A program made the position numbers and the translations under genes. The notes under the pieces are model-generated. The model searched no databases, was not told the origin of the DNA, and saw only the letters and a list, made by a program, of their open reading frames with translations. 64,000 bases of DNA from Octopus bimaculoides (taxonomy: Eukaryota): NCBI RefSeq assembly GCF_001194135.2, contig NC_068986.1:106635429-106699428 (forward strand). The letters are read 5' to 3'. Shown piece by piece: positions 43,215 through 57,950 of the stretch. Position 1 is the first letter of the stretch. Every line of letters begins with the position of its first letter.

Positions 43215-43415
43215 TATTCTTTTATTTGTTTCAGTCATTTGACAGTAGCCATGCTGGAGCACCGCCTTTTGTCAAGAAAATCGACCCCAGGACTTATTCT
43301 TGGTAAACCTTGTACTTATTCTATCTCCCCCACTTGCCGAACCGCAAAGTGACGGGGACGTAAACACACCAGCACCGGTTGTCATGCGATGTCAGGGAGA
43401 CAAACACAGAGACTG

Positions 43416-43471
<56 letters not shown>

Positions 43472-43700
43472 NNNNNNNNNNNNNNNNNNNNNNNNNNNNN
43501 NNNNNNNNNNNNNNNNNNNNNNNNNNNNNNNNNNNNNNNNNNNNNNNNNNNNNNNNNNNNNNNNNNNNNNNNNNNNNNNNNNCTCACAAGGCTTTGGCCA
43601 GCTCGAGGCTATAGTAGAAGACACTTGCCCAAGATACCACGCATTGGGACTGAACCCGGAACCATGTGATTGGTAAGCCAGCTACTTCACTGACAGGCAC
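43215..43700 (-). mobile_element. SINE family 1
   Basis: Diverged head and tail with internal (CA)(TA)n gap. Confidence 0.85.
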
Positions 43701-43720
43701 TCCAGCGTCTACATACATGC

Positions 43721-43761
<41 letters not shown>

Positions 43762-45044
43762 CACACACAAATATGTATGCGTGTGTGTGCTGATATGTTC
43801 ATGCGTAAATAGTGATTTATCTATGCTAAATTGTGCAATCAGGATGAACAAATACAGCGACGTTTCACGCTTAAAGAGATGGAAGTACTTGTGTAATAGC
43901 AAGAAAGGTAAGTCAATATTTGTAGCATGTACAAAATACTGATTTCCATATCTCATTATAATTTATTGATATATGTACATTGTGGAAAGGCTATTGAGAT
44001 TAAAGTGTACTGAATATGGGATTTTCTTTTAGCATTCAAATCGATTCAAATAGACAACATATTTCCAATTTCCATATTTACGATCCACAATGCAAACTGT
44101 ATAAGACAGTATTTGTTAATAGGAAAGGTCATTGTAAATTTGTTTGATTTTTGTGAAAATAATAGCGACCTTAAGAGTCTTATTTTTTTTTCCACAACAT
44201 TAGTAATATGACAGGATTATACGAGATAGTTGAAATTATGTAGCAAACATCAGTATTATTAAAATTCGACAGTATATTTGCAAATGTTCCTAAACATTCA
44301 TGCACACTCAATCACCCCCACAATCATACACAGAACACATGCACGTACATTCACATGTCCATACACACAAACACATGCATGGTGGGTGGAAAGTAATTAG
44401 GCATTAAAAATTGCTTATAGAATTCCTAGTATCACAGGTCATGGCAAAACCATTTTTTAAAGTGACAACATTAATGAGAATTTATTATTTTTTCATTGTC
44501 TTATTTTATATATCTTATTTTCCCTGATGGCCAGTCGTTTGACTATTCAGGTGCGAGCTAAGGTAGCAGGACGCTATGAAGTATAGAATTCCATTGTTTT
44601 GGTTCAGAGATGGTGATGTGCATGTCTTTTATGAGGAAGTGTACAAAATCAATAATGTAGGCGATTGTAATGTATTTTGGCGATTTAAATAAGAGCTTTA
44701 AATCTTACTTCCAGCAGGTGGACATACTTAGCATGTCCTTTGATTAATTTTAATCCTTCAGTTATTTAAGGCTTTTTTGGGGCCTGCGATCGCCTAAATT
44801 ATTGATTCTATTATTATCATTTTTAAATTGTAACACAAGATAATAATAGAGTCAATGATATCTTCGCAAATATTTTCTCTGTATTGAAATTATTTTCAGA
44901 CACAAAACGACTCAGTTGTAACGCAGACTTCACCGTGACGAGTTGGGGCTCTCCATCATGGTAACGCGTCCTGAAAATGGCGGGGGCTATTATGCCGGTC
45001 CAGAAACCAGTCCACGTGAGTCCAGATACTTGAATGTATTCTTT

Positions 45045-45566
45045 TATTCTTTTACTCTTTTACTTGTTTCAGTCATTTGACTGCGGTCATGCTGGAGCAC
45101 CGCCTTCAGTCGAGCAAATCGACCCCAGGACTTATTCTTTGTAAGCTTAGTACTTATTCCGTCGGCCACTTTTGCCGAACCGCTATGTTACGGGGACGTA
45201 AACACACCAGCATCTGTTATGAAGCGATGTTGGGGGGGNNNNNNNNNNNNNNNNNNNNNNNNNNNNNNNNNNNNNNNNNNNNNNNNNNNNNNNNNNNNNN
45301 NNNNNNNNNNNNNNNNNNNNNNNNNNNNNNNNNNNNNNNNNNNNNNNNNNNNNNNNNNNNNNNNNNNNNNNNNNNNNNNNNNNNNNNNNNNNNNNNNNNN
45401 NNATATATACATATATACGACGGGCTTCTTTCAGTTTCCGTCTACCAAATCCACTCACAAGGTTTTTGTTGGCGCGAGGCTATAGTAGGAGACACTTGCC
45501 CAAGGTGCCACGCAGTGGGACTGAACCCGGAACCATGTGGTTGGTAAGTAAGCTACTTACCACACA
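45045..45566 (-). mobile_element. SINE family 1
   Basis: Head and tail conserved, internal gap. Confidence 0.9.
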
Positions 45567-45991
45567 GAAACTGAGTGATTGTCTTAATCTGTTTGCCTTC
45601 GGACGGTTGATTTCTGCAGTTTTTATCAGTGTATCTTGGCGATTTAAATAAGAGCTTTGACTGTTATTTCCAGCAGGTAGACATACTTAATATACCCTTT
45701 GATTAATTTTAATCCTTCATGAAAGTACATACTTTTGCATATGGATTCTGTCATCGTCGATTTCAGATCAACTAATTAACCTCCTCCTCGAAATAATGCT
45801 GTGAATTAGCAGCTCATTTTACTGACACATTGTTTTCATGTAATTTTCAGATTGAATTAGCATGACACGTTACTACAAAGGTAAACGTTTGAATTTCAGT
45901 TGTATTTCCTCTGTGTACATGTACGTGTACAAACCATAATGTGCGTGCAATTTGTACTGACAATGCTACGTTAGACGTGTCTCCGTATGTA

Positions 45992-46638: not shown

Positions 46639-46708
46639 ATTCTGGAACGTTCGTAACTCCTTTGGGAAGGATTACAAGGAGGAACAAAGTTGCCAGATAT
46701 GAATACAT
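46639..46708 (-). pseudogene. Copy C signal-peptide exon (MYSYLATLFLLVILPKGVTNVPE); gene truncated, Cys exons 1-2 not found
   Basis: cag|ATG and gtaagc donor are intact. About 20 nt downstream the sequence switches to a mariner relic. I found no homolog of Cys exon 1 or 2 in 39.7-46.6 kb outside small gaps. Confidence 0.7.
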
Positions 46709-48468: not shown

Positions 48469-48500
<32 letters not shown>

Positions 48501-50231
48501 GCCCTCTTTTATATGTGTATATCCATATGTATGAGGATTAACTCAGATGAAGAGTATTATATACGTAACAAAGTAATTTAAGTGCCAGTAACAAGGTCGT
48601 GCTTGTGCGACAAAAATTCTGAAGTTTCATCAAATAAAATGAATTTGATTTTAACAGTTTTTTGAGCTAGTTATTTACTACACTGATTTAGCTAACGTAT
48701 AAAACAAAATATAATAGCGACAAGATAATTCGCACCAGCATCAACGTGATAGAGCGTTATCAGGCTCTATTTTGACAAATCGCATGCACAGCTCTTTTCT
48801 CTCATGCAGCAGTTTTCAATAGCCACCAATTCCATTTCAGCAGAAATGAATAAATATATAAATAAATAAACACGTATCTCTGGCGGGAAATGTTATAAAA
48901 GAAATGCATGAGTTGTGCCGGATTCTAAAAAAAAAATACAATTATCAAAGTAATGAATATTCAGTGTGAGGATAATTGTTGGTACAACCTCAGCTACCAA
49001 ATATTGCAATAGCAACCAGAAACAAGAGCACAGAAATCGCATCATAAGATGCTAAGTAGGGAGCCTACACGTTTTAATGGACCTGCTAGAAATATCAACC
49101 AAATCTTCCTAGTATCCTTCGTTATTGCGTAAATAATTTGATAAAAAGGAAAGACTATGCCTGAAAACAAAAATAGTACGTGACGTCCACGAATAGAATA
49201 TATTTTGATCATAGAATTTGTTTTAATCGCTCGTGTAAATTAAACAACAATAATTACTATTTCAAAGTCGTGTTCCACCTATGATTTCGAGAGGAATTTC
49301 ACGCAAAATAGATTCAATATTATTAGTGTGATGAAAGTGTAAAATAATTACAAGACATTTATATTCAAAACGAAAGGTAATTAATGTCCGTGTCATCCGT
49401 CTAGGGATTAATTATAATAGGTCTTTGTGTCACATTTCATAAACAAAATGAAAAGAAATTCAGTTCTAAATTGCTACTAGACATGTAACTTACCTCGAAA
49501 TCCTGAACGAGAGCTGAAAAATATTTAACAAATTAAATTAACTAGAATTGCAAACGTTTTCAGAATTTCAGTTTATGTAACATACAACCGCCGTATGTGG
49601 TATATGGAAACTGTAAACATACATTCTCTACATGAATTTCTGGTTTATAGCTATAATACAAATAGGTTTTAGGTTTGCAATGACATGTTCATTGTTAGTT
49701 TTACTATTAGCGTTTAACACTAATTGTTGACCGATACATAACTCGACAGATAACAAAGGAAATGTAGAAAATTAGGACAAAAGCATATCAAATCATTTGG
49801 CGATGGGAACGAAGTTCTAATTAGGAAATTCCATCTAGGAACATATAATCCAATATATTACTTAATTGAGATAGAAGGGAGTTATTTTACTTGAATATTG
49901 GTTGTAATTCTAGCTAGTGAACATGGCGTTGTGAATGAATGATTCACTAAAATACTGAAACTTCACATTCATGGAATCATAATTTCACATCCCCAGTCAG
50001 TACCTACTATTACGAGATTCCATACTAATTGAGCTTCCACGTTTTACAATTTCACCTATGTGTTGCTAATGGACTTATGCAAGTGTCAATGATGTTTTAA
50101 TTTTGTTAATGAACAAAACCTGTAACCCTTTGTTTAAACAACAGTATAATTAGTATTTTCATAAATGTTGTTTCTTTTTTCTTTTTACTATTGTCAATCT
50201 TTCATATGTAGGAGATATTTCTGCCGCACCC

Positions 50232-51149: not shown

Positions 51150-51560
51150 TAATAAAGGAGCTGTCGAGTGGTACCCACACGATGGAAAGCGTTCAATCGG
51201 AAGACCTCCACACAGGTGATATGATTCAAAAAAAATGTTCGGTACAACGTAGAGGAGAATGGTGTGAGAACGATGGGAATGGAGCGAATGCTGTGCGAGT
51301 GGAGCCGACGCGGCACGAGACATTCTGGCCTATCTAGTTGATCCAGGTGAAGTAAATATATTTAACCGTAATCACAAACCTGGTGACACCTCCTCCATAG
51401 AGTACAGAGGTATCATTACATTCTCCAGGTGGATTTCCGTGCGCAACCAACTGAGACTATGAATATTTTACAATCATCTCGTTTTTTTATCTACCCCGAG
51501 GTTTCCTGCAGGTTGCCGCCTTAAAGCATACGTTCCCTGAGTCTTTCCTATGTCATTCTA
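51150..51560. mobile_element. Two RTE-clade LINE 3' relics (+ at 51150-51340, - at about 51400-51560)
   Basis: Plus strand reads EWYPHDGKRSIGRPPHR(W to stop)YD, the RTE W.P....R..GRP..RW.D motif. Minus strand reads GYTVRMT*ERL, resembling GH..RM...RL. Confidence 0.6.
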
Positions 51561-52100
51561 ACCGTATATCCAAAGTACTGGTGCTATGCTGACTCTTATT
51601 GCGAAGTAACTGCTCGACCTGGAGAGATGCTTCGATTAAATAGCCTTAAAAGGTAACCTGGCAGTAAAGTAATGATAAATTTGAGATTTATTCTTATGGA
51701 GTAGTAATTTTTATTTCAAACCTAACTGTTAATCAGTTGCTAACTATTTTCCCTCATTGGACGATGTCCGCCATAATCTATTTTGGATCTGACGCTTTGT
51801 ACAATTTTAAATTCTGATAAACAAATTTCTGGAAAAAGTTTCTACATCTGTTCTCCTCAATATATTAATACACTTACATCTATGATTAATACTCTACGTG
51901 CTAGAATAGTTTACGAAACGCAGTTAATATATTTTCACTAATAAATGTAGAAAATGCTACAAGAACGAACGTAAAAGCTGATAACTTAAATAACCTTATT
52001 CAATAAATATGTAAGTATTCACACATAAAGACAAAGCCAATAGTTAACTCATCTGCTATGAAAAATAGGAAGAAAGTATATATTAATTACTATTCCTTAC

Positions 52101-52223
52101 AGGTTCTCAGCGTTTTCGTTACTGAGGTGATACGAGTTATTTCTTTATAACCATCCAATAAACCTGTATGTGTATTCTGATCGCTACAAAAGCAACTTGA
52201 ATGATTGTAACCTACGTGACAAT
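52101..52223 (-). CDS. Copy D Cys exon 1 variant (DCHVGYNHSSCFCSDQNTHTGLLDGYKEITRITSVTKTLRT)
   Basis: Acceptor catttcctttacag, donor T|gtaagg, 123 nt (in-frame one-codon deletion), no stop. Three of six Cys are replaced (TGT to GGT, TAT, CGT). No exon 2 homolog before the unit boundary near 51560. Confidence 0.65.
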
Positions 52224-52998
52224 CTGTAAAGGAAATGCAAGTATTAACGCTAAAAAAGACAAGTTATTTTTCTGTTTGACGGGTTGGATCAGTGATTTAG
52301 TTTATGTGGATTAGTAAAAATTCTTCTCGAACTAAATTCCTTCAACTATTAGATTTGATTGCTAGGTCTTAATAAGTGTCGTAATCGTGTGAATGACGAA
52401 AGCGCTCATGAGCAGAAGCCAATACAGCAGTCAATATTGACACCTTGTTATCTTGGTTGCTAACCAAGGGACTGATAAGAAGCTGAAGCGACTTTGTGTA
52501 TTAAGGGCGCCGGATGATTAGCGAACGGCATCTAGAAAAGCGAGATAATTAATTTCCAGTCAAATAGTGATGTAATTTGTATTTAGTAGACAAATATTTA
52601 TTGTTAAATTTTTCGACTATATCAATATGATGTTAGTAAATTTTTATAGTATTTTACTTTCAATTTCGCTTCGTATTTTCATTCATTTTCTTTAAATATT
52701 TCTTCTTAAACGTGGTAATTTCACAAAAAAATGAAGGTTATTGTCTTAATCTAGAATTTTTGTTTTGTTAATTATACTTCTTAATTTTGTCATAGAAATT
52801 TACACGAAAGGTCCAATGATATAAGACGTTTACCGACCTGTAACTAAGAGGTGTGAAATATTTCATGGTTGTGACGAAAACTTACATTGCATGCTGCATG
52901 GAAAGAAGACATGGAGGCTTTTAATGGGGTCAATTATGATCTTATACACTCATCATATTCATTATCAAAGACGAAAACTTAAGAATATTGGAGCTTAC

Positions 52999-53068
52999 CT
53001 TCTGGAGCATTCGTAACACCTTTGGGAAGGATTACAAGAAGGAATAAAGTTACCGGAAATGTATACAT
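52999..53068 (-). CDS. Copy D signal-peptide exon (MYTFPVTLFLLVILPKGVTNAPE)
   Basis: cag|ATG, G|gtaagc, 70 nt, only 4 nt different from copy B. Confidence 0.8.
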
Positions 53069-54743: not shown

Positions 54744-55761
54744 ATGGGCTCTGTAGACTTTCCATCAACAAAATTTACTCATAATTTTAGTCGAACATAC
54801 TTGCTCTAGGTGACGTGCAATGGGACCGATCTCGAAATGAAATATTTACAAAGCAATGCCTGCAACTATGTTCGTCATTGTGCCACAGTAAATATTGAGA
54901 CATGAAATGGGTAACACATTGGGTGAAAAGGACGAATTTGATATCCTTGATGGTAGAACATGTCCATATTTTATGGAAGGGCACCAAATTCACCAGGAGT
55001 CGAAAATTATTTTCCCTCACTTGAGAGACTTGCGTTTAGCTCCGATACAAGATTTATACTTTTATTCTTTTACATGTTTCAGACATTAGACTGTGGTCAT
55101 GGAGGAAAATTGAAGGAAAATATGGAACGCTTCACTAATATGTGTATGATTCCTATTCAGAAGCCATGATAAATTTCTGTGCATCGTTTGAGTTTTAGTA
55201 TATGTACTGCCGAATTGTGTACGCAAATTAATTTTTAAGATGGCGATCTGAGTCGTTCGAAGCAGTACAAAGTTCCACCGTGATGTTCTTCGCCTTTCAT
55301 TCATTCGTAGTCGATAAAATAAATACCAGTTTATCACTGGAGTTAATGAAATCGACTCTGAAATTTCTCAAATCATATTAGTTTTCCATTTTGTTAGCTA
55401 AAACCCATGACTGCCTTTGTGTTCATGACAGATAATTATTCTGAGTTTGGAGAGGATTGTGTTTGGGATTTCTAGTTAGTTTAGCATCAGATATGTGAAG
55501 TTGATCGTATAGCAGTTGATCATTTTAAGTGTACATGCAAAAGAGCTAATAATGTCTTTTGTTTTGTTATTCTTTAAAACAATAGCAGTTGACATGAGTC
55601 AATCTGAGCATCACATTGATCACTATATAATTAACTATCAGTATAACGTTACACTCGCAATCACACATAGGAATATATTGATACAAATATAGAGAAAAGT
55701 ATAAGTATAGAATGATGAATATATAGTTATATATAAGCACACTCATGTACGTATGTATGGT

Positions 55762-56136: not shown

Positions 56137-57374
56137 ACATATGTATACATCGATAAGCACAAACTCATATTCATATGAAAAACATTATATACGTAGCAAA
56201 GTAATTTAAGTGCCAGTAAATAGTCTGAAGTCGTACAACAAAAATATTGACATTTCAACCAATAAAATTAATTTCATTGAAACAATATTATTTTGCGTAA
56301 ATAATTAATAACAATTCCAATTATAATGTATATAAACAAAATATAATGGCGACAAGGTGATTCAAACCAGCACCAATTGAATACAGTGTTCCCAGTCACA
56401 TATATTTCGACAAATTGCATGTATAGCTCTTTTCTCTCATGCGGCAGTTTTCAATGCCGACCTGTTCCATTTCAGTACAAATGAATAAATAAATGAAAAG
56501 ATGCGAATCCCTGGTTCAATCTGTGGCGGGAAAAGTTATAAAAGAAATACATAAGTTGCGCACAATTCTAACGAAAAATCAATTTTCAAAGAAATTAATT
56601 TTCGGTGTGAGGATTATTGTTGGTACAGCCACAACTATCAAACTTTACGGTAGCAACCAAGAAATTGTTGGAGTAGGGAGCCTAAAAGCTTTAATGTACT
56701 TGCTAGAAATATCAACCAAATCTTCACAATAACGTACGTTATTTTATAACTCATTATATGAGAGGGAAAGATTATGACTGAAAAATGAAATATCACAATA
56801 TCATACGTTATATCATAAATCATTAGAGAAGAGGGAAAGATATAACGTCTACGAATATATTTTGATCATAGTTCTTTTTGTTAATCGCTCATGTAAATTA
56901 AACAACAATAATAATTATTTGAAAAATGCATTCCACCTAGGCCTTCGAGTGGAATTTCACTCAAAATAGATTCGATATTATTGATGTGATAAAAGTGTAA
57001 AATAATTAAAAGATGTTTATATTCAAAACGAAAGGTAATTAATGTTAGAGCCATATGTCTAGAGAATAATTATAATAGTTCTTTATGTCACATTTTATAA
57101 ACAAAATTCTAAATATGCTACTAGACATGTAACTTGCCTCGAAATTCTAAATGAGATTTGAAAATTATTTGGCAAACTAAAATTAACTAATTTTGCAAAA
57201 TTTTTCAGAGTATGAGTTTAGCCACCGCATGTGGTATATGGAAATCGTAAACATACATTCTCTCCATGAATTTCTAATTTATATCTATAATACGAATATG
57301 TTTTAATGTTTACAATGACACATTCATTGTTAGTTTTGCTATTAGTGTTTAACAGTAATTCATGACCGATATAT

Positions 57375-57572
57375 ATTTTTCTACTCTATGCACAAGGGAC
57401 GAAAGTATGGCGGAGGAGGGACAGTCGATTAGATCGACCCCAGTAGGCAACTGGTACTTAGTTTAGCGAACCCGAAAGGACGAAAGGCAAAGTCGACCTC
57501 GGCGGAATTTGAAATCAGAACATAAAGAGAGACAAAACATCGCTAAGCATTTCGTCCGGCGTGCTCGCCGCA
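57375..57572 (-). mobile_element. SINE family 3 with 13-bp target-site duplication
   Basis: Flanked by TCATGACCGATAT on both sides. The site is empty in units A, B and C. Confidence 0.85.
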
Positions 57573-57841
57573 AATCATGACCGATATGGAACGCGACAAA
57601 TAACACAGGAGAATTTAGAAAATTAGGACAGAAGAATACAAAATCATTTGGCGATGGAGACGAACCCTCAATTAGGAAATTCCATCTGGGGACATGTAAT
57701 GCAATGTATTAATTAATGAAGGAGGGAGTTATTTTCCATGAATACTGGTTGTAATTCTAGCAAACGGAACATGAAGTTATGAATGAGAGATTCACTAAAG
57801 TTCTCAGGCTTCCATTCTATTGGAACATAATTACGCCTCCC

Positions 57842-57950
57842 CATTCAATGCTTACAATTACAAGATTACATAAAGATTACATTCAATGCTTACAATTACA
57901 AGATTACATACAAGATTACATTCAATGCTTACAATTACAAGATTACATAC
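57842..57950. repeat. 38-39 bp tandem repeat, about three copies
   Basis: cattcaatgcttacaattacaagattacat repeated three times. Confidence 0.9.

What the first reader, a model, noticed from the sequence alone, without database searches (positions are those of the whole stretch)
52101..52223. Mature Cys exon evolves faster than its introns and signal exon
Hand counts for B versus D: signal exon 4/70 nt different (about 6%), two intron samples about 12-15%, Cys exon 1 about 43/123 (about 35%) with only a handful of synonymous changes. The exon keeps its frame, both splice sites and has no stop. For A versus B: signal 11/70, exon 1 33/126, all six Cys kept. Neutral decay should not push an exon above intron divergence. 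A conserved leader with a hypervariable mature region is established for conotoxins and antimicrobial peptides. D has also lost three of six Cys, implying an altered disulfide framework.
Basis: partly seen in the sequence, partly recalled or inferred. Interest (0 to 1): 0.72.

Follow-up and report, generated by a model that had tools for sequence, protein, structure and literature searches.

The report
Fast-evolving cysteine exon, octopus secreted-protein cluster
The flagged stretch is one exon of a probably decaying, truncated copy in a cluster of octopus-only genes for small secreted cysteine-rich proteins. Their mature-protein exons evolve about twice as fast as the introns around them, as in venom and defence peptide genes, but positive selection on this copy is not shown.

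Summary
The counts hold. B vs D differ at 4/70 signal-exon sites, 140/725 intron sites (19%, not 12-15%) and 44/123 Cys-exon sites. No non-coding 123-column window reaches 44.

The window is Octopus bimaculoides. It carries four tandem minus-strand copies of an uncharacterised family of secreted 12-Cys proteins. A is LOC128248166 and B is LOC128248167. C and D were not among the annotated proteins my searches returned.

The excess is family-wide, not special to D. On an 8-sequence tree with O. vulgaris relatives, Cys exon 1 evolves 1.85x faster than introns and flanks (p=6e-12). The rate is equal at all three codon positions. The synonymous rate is 1.8x non-coding and dN/dS is 1.06. The signal exon runs at 1.0x.

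D's exon belongs to an old D-type subfamily shared with O. vulgaris. Against those relatives its dN/dS is 0.83-0.95. D has no downstream exons before copy C, has a GC donor on exon 1, and alone lost three otherwise invariant Cys. That fits neutral decay.

The low B-D leader divergence is a roughly 100-bp local tract, probably gene conversion.

Verdict: a real, venom-gene-like "accelerated evolution" pattern in a new family. Adaptive remodelling of D is not supported.

The parts
52101..52223 (-). Copy D, Cys exon 1 (the finding). 123 nt, phase 1-1. Encodes (D)CHVGYNHSSCFCSDQNTHTGLLDGYKEITRITSVTKTLRT. Only 3 of the 6 family-invariant Cys remain.
   Evidence: Acceptor ttacag|, donor |gtaagg.
52999..53068 (-). 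Copy D, signal-peptide exon (70 nt, MYTFPVTLFLLVILPKGVTNAPE). A CTAAC..CAG acceptor lies directly before the ATG.
57138..57157 (-). Copy D, 3' end of the 5' (mostly untranslated) exon 1, inside repeated block X (56139-57870). Its donor is GC (57137-57136), where A, B and C have GT.
52224..52998 (-). Copy D, intron between the signal exon and Cys exon 1. This is the neutral comparator. It is 19.3% diverged from B and 15.0% from O. vulgaris OvD1.
51787..52100 (-). Copy D, downstream intronic sequence still homologous to A and B. Homology ends at about 51787. No Cys exon 2 or last exon follows before copy C's block X, which begins at 50024.
46639..46708 (-). Copy C, signal exon. Homology to A, B and D stops 26 nt after it (46613). 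No Cys exon 1 or 2 was found. Assembly gaps are present.
44029..44096 (-). Last coding exon downstream of C (..FCIVDRKYGNWKYVVYLNRFEC*). It is the only terminal exon available to C or D.
49494..49513 (-). Copy C, 3' end of exon 1, in block X (48485-50024).
34356..34425 (-). Copy B (LOC128248167), signal exon.
33473..33598 (-). Copy B, Cys exon 1 (126 nt, six Cys).
31477..31608 (-). Copy B, Cys exon 2 (132 nt, four Cys).
24642..24709 (-). Copy B, last exon (two Cys plus stop). The spliced product equals XP protein P0009 exactly.
36375..36394 (-). Copy B, 3' end of exon 1, in block X (35584-36891).
12234..12266 (-). Copy A (LOC128248166), exon 1 with the alternative ATG (MFFLALIQNSE) used by isoforms X1 and X3. 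Lies in block X (11256-12779).
9717..9786 (-). Copy A, signal exon.
8818..8943 (-). Copy A, Cys exon 1 (126 nt, six Cys).
7509..7640 (-). Copy A, Cys exon 2 (132 nt, four Cys).
2239..2306 (-). Copy A, last exon (two Cys plus stop).

Best explanation
What it is. The interval is the first cysteine exon of copy D in a four-copy tandem cluster, ordered D-C-B-A on the minus strand. The cluster belongs to an octopus-restricted, uncharacterised gene family. A full gene has five exons: a 5' exon, a signal exon, Cys exon 1 (6 Cys), Cys exon 2 (4 Cys) and a last exon (2 Cys). All coding junctions are in phase 1. The product is a secreted protein of about 108 residues with 12 Cys.

Shown:
- The mature-protein exons evolve roughly twice as fast as the introns, flanks and signal exon around them, in all lineages tested.
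- All three codon positions run at the same rate, and dN/dS is about 1.
- The Cys scaffold is untouched everywhere except in D.
This is the 'accelerated evolution' pattern described for snake-venom PLA2 and conotoxin genes.

Inferred, most likely. There is recurrent diversifying selection on the loops between cysteines of a secreted ligand, toxin or defence-type protein. A locally raised substitution input in these exons may also contribute.

Why B vs D looks extreme:
- It spans an old split between B-type and D-type subfamilies. The subfamily stem branches are about 9-11 times longer in the exon than in non-coding DNA.
- D adds its own unconstrained changes.
- D is most likely a degenerating partial duplicate rather than an adaptively remodelled gene.
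- The small B-D leader distance is a short local tract, probably gene conversion.
For: Identity and structure. A and B match NCBI models XP_052824992/3/5 and LOC128248167. All exons and splice sites are mapped.

Family-wide acceleration:
- Fitch steps per site: 1.19 in the exon, 0.65 in the intron, 0.65 downstream, 0.67 in the signal exon.
- Non-coding-calibrated ML: exon rate 2.03x (7 taxa, p=7e-14) and 1.85x (8 taxa, p=6e-12).
- Codon positions 1/2/3 run at 1.96/1.75/1.86x.
- Non-synonymous divergence exceeds non-coding in sister pairs: ObiA-OvA 0.231 vs 0.114 (p=0.002); OvD1-OvD2 0.232 vs 0.107 (p=0.001).
- Cys exon 2 and the last exon run at 1.66-1.67x at non-synonymous sites.
- CpG content does not explain the excess.

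Old D subfamily:
- Exon clades A, B and D have 94, 86 and 99% bootstrap and span both species. The intron D clade has 80%.
- D, OvD1 and OvD2 share the codon deletion.
- stemD and stemB are 8.7x and 11.4x longer in the exon than in non-coding DNA.

D decaying:
- No downstream exons before copy C.
- GC donor on exon 1.
- Not among the annotated proteins returned, whereas A and B are.
- omega on the ObiD branch is 1.19, not significant.
- D has three Cys losses; the other seven sequences have none.
- The state is compatible with neutral simulation.

Leader tract.

Precedent. Introns more conserved than mature coding regions, signal region excepted, equal rates at three codon positions and KA about equal to or above KS, as summarised in PMC7285919. 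Conotoxin exon-specific rates in PMC3862624.
Against: - dN/dS is not above 1 (1.00-1.09, p=0.75-1.0; loops only 1.32, p=0.31). Classical evidence for positive selection is therefore absent.
- The synonymous rate is itself about 1.8-2x non-coding (p=0.008-0.014). Selection on amino acids does not predict that.
- The inference rests on introns and flanks being a fair neutral yardstick. I could not test that genome-wide.
- The second ortholog pair (LOC128248058 vs OvB2) shows only a weak Cys exon 1 excess (0.159 vs 0.113, p=0.12). Its fastest exon is the signal exon (0.257).
- The exons are short (41 codons), so estimates are noisy.
- D keeps an open frame and both splice sites. It could still be expressed and spliced to the last exon at 44029-44096.
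- No expression or function data were available.
Confidence: 0.55

Rival explanations
1. Copy D's mature exon was driven by lineage-specific positive selection. D is a neofunctionalised paralog with a new disulfide framework of three or four Cys.
For: - The D-branch excess in the A/B/D three-taxon analysis is 24/123 vs 114/1692 (2.9x, p=7e-6).
- dN/dS is 1.7-1.85 against A and B.
- omega_D is 3.1, or about 5 when branch lengths are fixed to non-coding.
- The frame, the in-frame deletion and both splice sites are intact.
- A hypothetical D plus C-last-exon product is open.
Against: - With O. vulgaris D-type sequences added, most of the 'D branch' turns out to be the old subfamily stem, and the codon deletion is ancestral.
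- D vs OvD1 and OvD2 gives dN/dS of 0.95 and 0.83. The ObiD branch omega is 1.19, not significant.
- The exon-only LRT for omega_D>1 gives p=0.10.
- D lacks Cys exon 2 and a last exon of its own, has a GC donor, and was not among the annotated proteins returned.
- The hypothetical product has an odd number of Cys (5).
- An open frame plus three lost Cys is unremarkable under neutrality.
Confidence: 0.12
2. Yardstick artefact. The mature exons are simply almost unconstrained apart from the Cys (omega about 1). The introns and flanks evolve below the true neutral rate, through constraint, alignment bias, or a genome-wide tendency of synonymous sites to outrun introns. Nothing is accelerated.
For: - omega is 1.0-1.1 and the synonymous rate is raised as much as the non-synonymous rate.
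- In the second ortholog pair, pS is 0.17-0.26 in all four exons against 0.113 non-coding. That looks like a general offset.
- NG86 under-counts synonymous sites when transitions are favoured (kappa about 2).
Against: - The signal exon of the same genes has a synonymous rate of 0.83-0.95x non-coding and an overall rate of 1.0x. The offset is therefore not general to coding sequence here.
- Four independent non-coding partitions, and two ortholog pairs totalling more than 4.5 kb, all give about 11%. That is unlikely if all were equally constrained.
- Counting every gap column as a difference gives at most about 14% for ObiA-OvA, against 22% in the exon.
- The ML model accounts for kappa and still gives rho of 1.8-2.0.
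Confidence: 0.2
3. Mutational or recombinational cause. Mature exons receive extra substitutions. The source is either a locally raised mutation rate, as proposed for conotoxins, or short exchanges with divergent paralogous exons. Both would raise synonymous and non-synonymous change together.
For: - Rates are equal at codon positions 1, 2 and 3.
- Synonymous differences are raised even in codons whose amino acid is unchanged: 14 per 39 sites vs 0.141 non-coding, p=0.0006.
- The partial copy OvD1 has an exon branch 4.3x its flanks.
- Segment trees differ along the gene, so exchange does occur in the cluster.
- In the second half of the exon, ObiB is closer to OvD2 (14 differences) than to OvB2 (19).
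Against: - No mechanism is known that would spare introns tens of bases away.
- The six Cys codons show only about the neutral number of synonymous changes. This is a hand count: 2 TGT/TGC changes, about 1.8 expected.
- Numbers are small.
- Paralog exchange should also raise intron divergence.
Confidence: 0.1
4. The 'exon' is not coding. It is a chance open frame in segmentally duplicated non-coding DNA.
For: D itself has no protein model among those returned. The first word-based search found nothing.
Against: - Homologous exons in A and B are parts of NCBI protein models that my splicing reproduces exactly.
- Exon boundaries, phase and 12 Cys are conserved in O. vulgaris.
Confidence: 0.01

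Closest known systems
Accelerated evolution of crotaline snake-venom phospholipase A2 isozyme genes (Nakashima et al. 1993, 1995, as summarised in PMC7285919)
   Same: - Introns and flanks are more conserved than the mature protein-coding exons.
- The signal-peptide region is not accelerated.
- Substitutions accumulate at similar rates at all three codon positions.
- KA/KS is about 1.
- The genes form a tandem multigene family of secreted disulfide-rich proteins.
   Different: - There is no sequence or fold relationship.
- The host is an octopus, and the tissue of expression is unknown.
- Acceleration is about 2x rather than the larger factors reported for PLA2.
- KA/KS is not shown to exceed 1.
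Conotoxin precursor genes (signal / pro / mature exons with exon-specific substitution rates; PMC3862624)
   Same: - The host is a mollusc.
- The signal and the mature Cys-rich region lie on separate exons.
- The mature exon is hypervariable on a fixed Cys scaffold.
- In-frame trinucleotide indels occur in the mature exon.
- The synonymous rate is raised in the mature region. That last point is from my memory of Conticello et al. 2001 and was not checked here.
   Different: - Conotoxin signal sequences are unusually conserved. Here the signal exon evolves at the neutral (non-coding) rate.
- The product is far larger (about 108 residues, 12 Cys over three exons).
- There is no propeptide exon.
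- There is no homology to any conotoxin superfamily.
Partial-duplicate (unprocessed) pseudogenes in tandem gene clusters
   Same: Copy D keeps its 5' exons and introns but lacks 3' exons. It has lost residues that are invariant elsewhere. It evolves with omega of about 1, and my protein searches did not return it.
   Different: It has no stop codon or frameshift, and its splice sites are intact. A similarly truncated copy (OvD1) in O. vulgaris still keeps all six Cys.

Membership tests
Toxin-type 'accelerated evolution' gene family (pattern, not homology) | Mature-coding exon diverges more than adjacent introns and flanks | tested here: met
   The exon runs at 1.85-2.03x non-coding (p<=6e-12). 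It exceeds the intron in every pair in the 7-sequence matrix. The excess is weaker, 1.4x and not significant, in the LOC128248058/OvB2 pair.
Toxin-type 'accelerated evolution' gene family (pattern, not homology) | Similar substitution rates at the three codon positions | tested here: met
   1.22/1.17/1.17 steps per site. 1.96/1.75/1.86x non-coding.
Toxin-type 'accelerated evolution' gene family (pattern, not homology) | dN/dS at or above 1 in the mature region | tested here: inconclusive
   omega is 1.00-1.09 and not different from 1. Sister pairs range from 0.49 to 1.46. Loop codons alone give 1.32, p=0.31.
Toxin-type 'accelerated evolution' gene family (pattern, not homology) | Signal-peptide region not accelerated | tested here: met
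   The signal exon runs at 0.99-1.02x non-coding. One ortholog pair is an exception: 18/70 differences.
Toxin-type 'accelerated evolution' gene family (pattern, not homology) | Expression in a venom, defence or reproductive secretory tissue | not testable with these tools
   No expression data were reachable. The locus identifier is absent from the paper library.
Conotoxin superfamilies | Highly conserved superfamily signal sequence, and homology of precursor and Cys framework | tested here: not met
   The signal exon evolves at the neutral rate. The profile search of 1.84 billion proteins hit only Octopus proteins. There is no Pfam or PDB match.
Any described cysteine-rich domain family (Pfam / PDB) | Significant profile match | tested here: not met
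   Pfam gave no family for the exon peptides. For full-length members it gave only two stray sub-threshold single-member hits. PDB gave 0 hits at E<=10. The AF2 model is too poor for a fold search (pLDDT 41.8).
Unprocessed pseudogene (copy D) | Loss of parts of the gene needed for a full product | tested here: met
   No Cys exon 2 or last exon lies between 52100 and copy C's block X. Assembly gaps leave some doubt.
Unprocessed pseudogene (copy D) | Disabling mutations (stop, frameshift, splice-site loss) | tested here: not met
   The frame is open and the AG/GT sites are intact. The only changes are a GT>GC donor on exon 1 and three lost invariant Cys.
Unprocessed pseudogene (copy D) | Neutral evolution on its own branch | tested here: inconclusive
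   omega on the ObiD branch is 1.19, not significant, but background omega is also about 1. All Cys losses in the family fall on D: 3 there, 0 in the other sequences.

The most novel reading that the evidence does not exclude
The extra substitutions in the mature exons are not only selective. These exons would receive a genuinely higher input of change than introns tens of bases away, through targeted mutation or exon-limited exchange between paralogs. The 'partial copies' D in O. bimaculoides and OvD1 in O. vulgaris would not be dead. They would be alternative 5' cassettes (promoter + signal exon + Cys exon 1) spliced to shared 3' exons. Together that would amount to a diversity-generating architecture for an octopus secreted protein.
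Probability: 0.1. Interest if true: 0.75.

Novelty: new member of a known kind. Interest (0 to 1): 0.4.

Why it matters
If the pattern stands, this is a cephalopod example of the exon-faster-than-intron evolution so far documented mainly in snake, cone-snail and similar toxin genes and in some defence peptides. It occurs in a gene family with no name, no known domain and no relatives found outside Octopus.

It flags LOC128248166, LOC128248167 and LOC128248058 as candidates for proteins involved in an arms race or in recognition, such as venom, immunity, reproduction or chemical signalling. The system has clean ortholog pairs and short introns. That makes it suitable for separating selection from mutation as the cause of raised synonymous rates in such genes.

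For the specific finding, the practical message is cautionary. A striking paralog contrast shrank to an ordinary decaying copy once orthologs from a second species were added.

Tried and rejected
- Word-indexed protein search with B's first 65 residues found nothing, although B's own model is in the collection. The exhaustive profile search was needed.
- Pfam on exon peptides and on full-length members gave nothing usable.
- PDB sequence search gave no hits.
- AlphaFold2 on A with a 3-row alignment gave pLDDT 41.8, so no fold search was run.
- A six-frame scan for further Cys-rich exons and tblastn with all family exons found no downstream exons for D. They also found no Cys exons for C.
- CpG hypermutability was rejected as a cause. 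Non-CpG columns give 1.11 steps per site in the exon against 0.56-0.62 in non-coding DNA.
- Multi-hit codons were rejected as the cause of the raised synonymous rate. Codons with an unchanged amino acid are also raised.
- Flank alignments around Cys exon 2 were unreliable (simple repeats and gaps gave p=0.3-0.48). I did not use them as a yardstick.
- Literature searches found no paper on the locus, no relevant octopus Cys-rich family and no genome-wide dS for the species pair.
- A Pfam check of the suspected retroelement fragment at 51160-51360 failed because of stop codons.
- OvB2 was first treated as B's ortholog. One search showed that its true ortholog is LOC128248058, so I re-ran the analysis with 8 taxa.

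Full report
**What is there**

The window is a gap-rich, AT-rich draft sequence (24 runs of N). I identified it as Octopus bimaculoides through protein matches.

The interval 52101-52223 on the minus strand is a 123-nt open exon. It is bounded by ttacag| and |gtaagg.

Self-comparison shows four tandem paralogous units on the minus strand.

An exhaustive profile search with the three Cys-exon peptides hit only Octopus proteins.
- A is LOC128248166, with XP isoforms of 142-159 aa.
- A later profile search showed that B is LOC128248167. Its 131-aa product equals my spliced model exactly.
- A third O. bimaculoides paralog, LOC128248058, lies elsewhere on the chromosome.

These models give the full gene structure:
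- a 5' exon inside a repeated upstream block X
- the 70-nt signal exon
- Cys exon 1 (126 nt, 6 Cys)
- Cys exon 2 (132 nt, 4 Cys)
- a last exon (2 Cys)

All coding junctions are in phase 1.

The mature protein has about 108 residues and 12 Cys. It has no Pfam or PDB relative. The AlphaFold model was unusable, with pLDDT 41.8. I found no literature on the locus.

**The observation**

For B vs D:
- signal exon 4/70
- Cys exon 44/123 (0.358)
- whole intron 140/725 (0.193), somewhat above the sampled 12-15%
- downstream 0.160

For A vs B, the signal exon differs at 11/70 and the Cys exon at 33/126.

The B-D exon excess over all non-coding sequence (0.177) is significant (Fisher p=4e-6). No non-coding window of the same size comes close: the maximum is 31 mismatches against 44. 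The flanks return to ordinary divergence immediately outside the splice sites.

D has lost three of six Cys, each by a single-base change.

**Why the D-specific reading fails**

Taken alone, A, B and D suggest a D-branch burst:
- a 2.9x excess on the D branch, p=7e-6
- dN/dS of 1.7-1.85
- omega_D of 3.1, although the exon-only LRT gives only p=0.10

I then fetched the O. vulgaris loci. They contain:
- an A ortholog (OvA)
- two D-type copies (OvD1 and OvD2)
- a B-type gene (OvB2), whose true O. bimaculoides ortholog is LOC128248058

D's exon shares the codon deletion and many residues with OvD1 and OvD2. Exon clades A, B and D have 94, 86 and 99% bootstrap, and each spans both species. The intron also supports the D clade, at 80%.

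So the B-type / D-type split predates the species split, which is put at about 34 Mya in PMC10700109. Most of the apparent 'D branch' is old subfamily stem.

Against its real relatives D gives dN/dS of 0.95 and 0.83. On its own branch omega is 1.19, not significant.

All O. vulgaris D-type exons keep six Cys. The losses are therefore private to the O. bimaculoides copy.

That copy shows several signs of decay:
- It has no Cys exon 2 or last exon before copy C's 5' block.
- Its exon 1 has a GC rather than a GT donor.
- It was not among the annotated proteins my searches returned, whereas A and B were.

I simulated neutral change on the inferred D-type ancestor, using the 19 substitutions D carries. 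The frame stays open 44% of the time, and three or more Cys are lost 31% of the time. Decay explains D's state without invoking a new disulfide framework.

**What survives, and is more general**

The exon-faster-than-intron pattern is a property of the whole family.

| Pair | Cys exon 1 | Non-coding |
|---|---|---|
| ObiA-OvA (orthologs) | 0.222 | 0.114 |
| OvD1-OvD2 (recent paralogs) | 0.244 | 0.107 |
| ObiD-OvD1 | 0.276 | 0.157 |

Fitch steps per site:
- exon 1.19
- intron 0.65
- downstream 0.65
- signal exon 0.67

I estimated branch lengths from introns and flanks, and then fitted a rate multiplier to each exon:
- Cys exon 1: 2.03x with 7 sequences (p=7e-14) and 1.85x with 8 sequences (p=6e-12)
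- signal exon: 0.99-1.02x

The three codon positions are equally fast (1.96/1.75/1.86x).

A codon model separates the two components. The synonymous rate is 1.82-1.97x non-coding (p=0.008-0.014). omega is 1.06-1.09 (p=0.75-0.82). With free branch lengths omega is 1.00.

Cys exon 2 and the last exon behave similarly, at 1.66-1.67x non-coding at non-synonymous sites.

I excluded two possible artefacts:
- CpG sites do not explain the excess.
- Multi-hit codons do not explain the raised synonymous rate.

The second clean ortholog pair, LOC128248058 vs OvB2, gives the same non-coding divergence (407/3593 = 0.113). Its Cys exon 1 excess is weaker (0.159, p=0.12), and its signal exon is fast (0.257). 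The effect therefore varies among lineages.

**The leader**

The signal exon is not conserved by selection. The B-D value of 4/70 lies in a 102-column tract with 5 mismatches (53081-52980, permutation p=0.02). D differs from its O. vulgaris relatives at 12-14 of the 70 signal-exon sites.

The signal-exon tree groups the O. bimaculoides copies B, C and D. The upstream region of D groups with the A clade at 92%. The 5' part of the unit is therefore a mosaic, which points to gene conversion or unequal exchange. It does not apply to the intron.

**Mechanism**

Shown: the mature exons change about twice as fast as adjacent non-coding DNA while the six Cys, the frame and the splice sites are kept.

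This matches what is called accelerated evolution in crotaline PLA2 genes. There, introns are more conserved than mature coding regions, the signal region is excepted, the three codon positions run at equal rates, and KA is about equal to or above KS (PMC7285919). It also matches the exon-specific rates of conotoxin genes (PMC3862624).

Inferred: the likeliest cause is diversifying selection on the inter-cysteine loops of a secreted protein engaged in some antagonistic or recognition interaction.

The raised synonymous rate is not predicted by that explanation alone. It keeps two rivals alive:
- extra mutational or recombinational input confined to the exons
- a biased yardstick, in which introns evolve below the neutral rate

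I could not obtain a genome-wide comparison of synonymous and intron divergence for these species, which would decide between them.

**Verdict**

The leader's similarity is probably gene conversion. D itself is most likely a decaying partial duplicate.

The novelty lies in a new, uncharacterised, octopus-restricted family that shows a known evolutionary pattern.

Noticed in passing
window 55116-55222 (-): A full-length match to U6 spliceosomal RNA (52.7 bits, E=2e-10). It lies inside copy D's first intron, between block X and the signal exon. It could be a gene or a pseudogene copy.
   Followed up: no
window 8244-8763; also 32616-33033, 45037-45567, 43215-43714, 80-668, 16797-17025, 6138-6301: An abundant SINE-like repeat of about 400-500 bp with an internal (TA)n/(TG)n core. 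Assembly gaps often break it there. Many copies also occur in the O. vulgaris loci. In copy A it is inserted right after ...CAGAC, 54 nt downstream of Cys exon 1, inside a tract otherwise nearly identical to B.
   Followed up: partly
window 8779..8182 (SINE excluded) vs 33427..33354: A 74-column tract just downstream of Cys exon 1 differs at only 2 positions between A and B, where about 18% is expected (permutation p=0.02). It is either a conversion tract or a conserved intronic element.
   Followed up: partly
window 53768-53069 (upstream of D's signal exon): D's upstream region groups with the A clade (ObiA+OvA+ObiD, 92% bootstrap), while its intron and exon group with the O. vulgaris D-type copies. 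The unit is a recombinant mosaic.
   Followed up: partly
window 57136-57137 (-): The donor of copy D's 5' exon is GC (gag|gcaagt). A, B and C have GT.
   Followed up: yes
window 14900-16700 (-), with GC skew +0.25 to +0.35 over 14-18 kb: A long tandem array that reads as an open frame of HSHSIPIPFPF-like units (587-aa ORF across a gap). It looks like a minisatellite rather than a gene.
   Followed up: no
window 22000-24000: Strong negative GC skew (-0.435) and G+C-rich repetitive ORFs at 22833-23321. Unexplained.
   Followed up: no
window 51160-51420 (+): Reads like a decayed retroelement fragment (..WYPHDGKRSIGRPPHR..), sitting where D's homology to its paralogs ends. This is by eye only; the Pfam check failed on stop codons.
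   Followed up: partly
window 2172-2306 and 7509-7528 (-): NCBI isoform X2 of A uses an earlier donor in Cys exon 2. It therefore reads the last exon in another frame (C-terminus FASWNVRIKM...), losing the last two Cys. This is either an annotation artefact or real alternative splicing.
   Followed up: partly
L001 78582-79542; L001 34351-34461 and 30299-30388 (-): O. vulgaris also has a truncated D-type copy (OvD1). Its homology starts only about 110 nt upstream of the ATG, and it has no downstream exons, yet it keeps six Cys. Its exon branch is 4.3x its flanks. A more distant family member lies on the opposite strand of the same locus.
   Followed up: partly
O. vulgaris proteins P0003 and P0004 (CAI9724927, CAI9724926): The deposited O. 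vulgaris models skip Cys exon 2. P0003 fuses about 250 residues of unrelated upstream sequence across a 98-kb 'gene', so these look like mis-predictions. Part of that upstream sequence looks transposon-derived, by eye only.
   Followed up: partly
tool behaviour, vs 67: The word-indexed search with B's first 65 residues reported no candidate, although B's exact protein (P0009) is in the collection. A negative from that tool with a short query is not reliable.
   Followed up: yes
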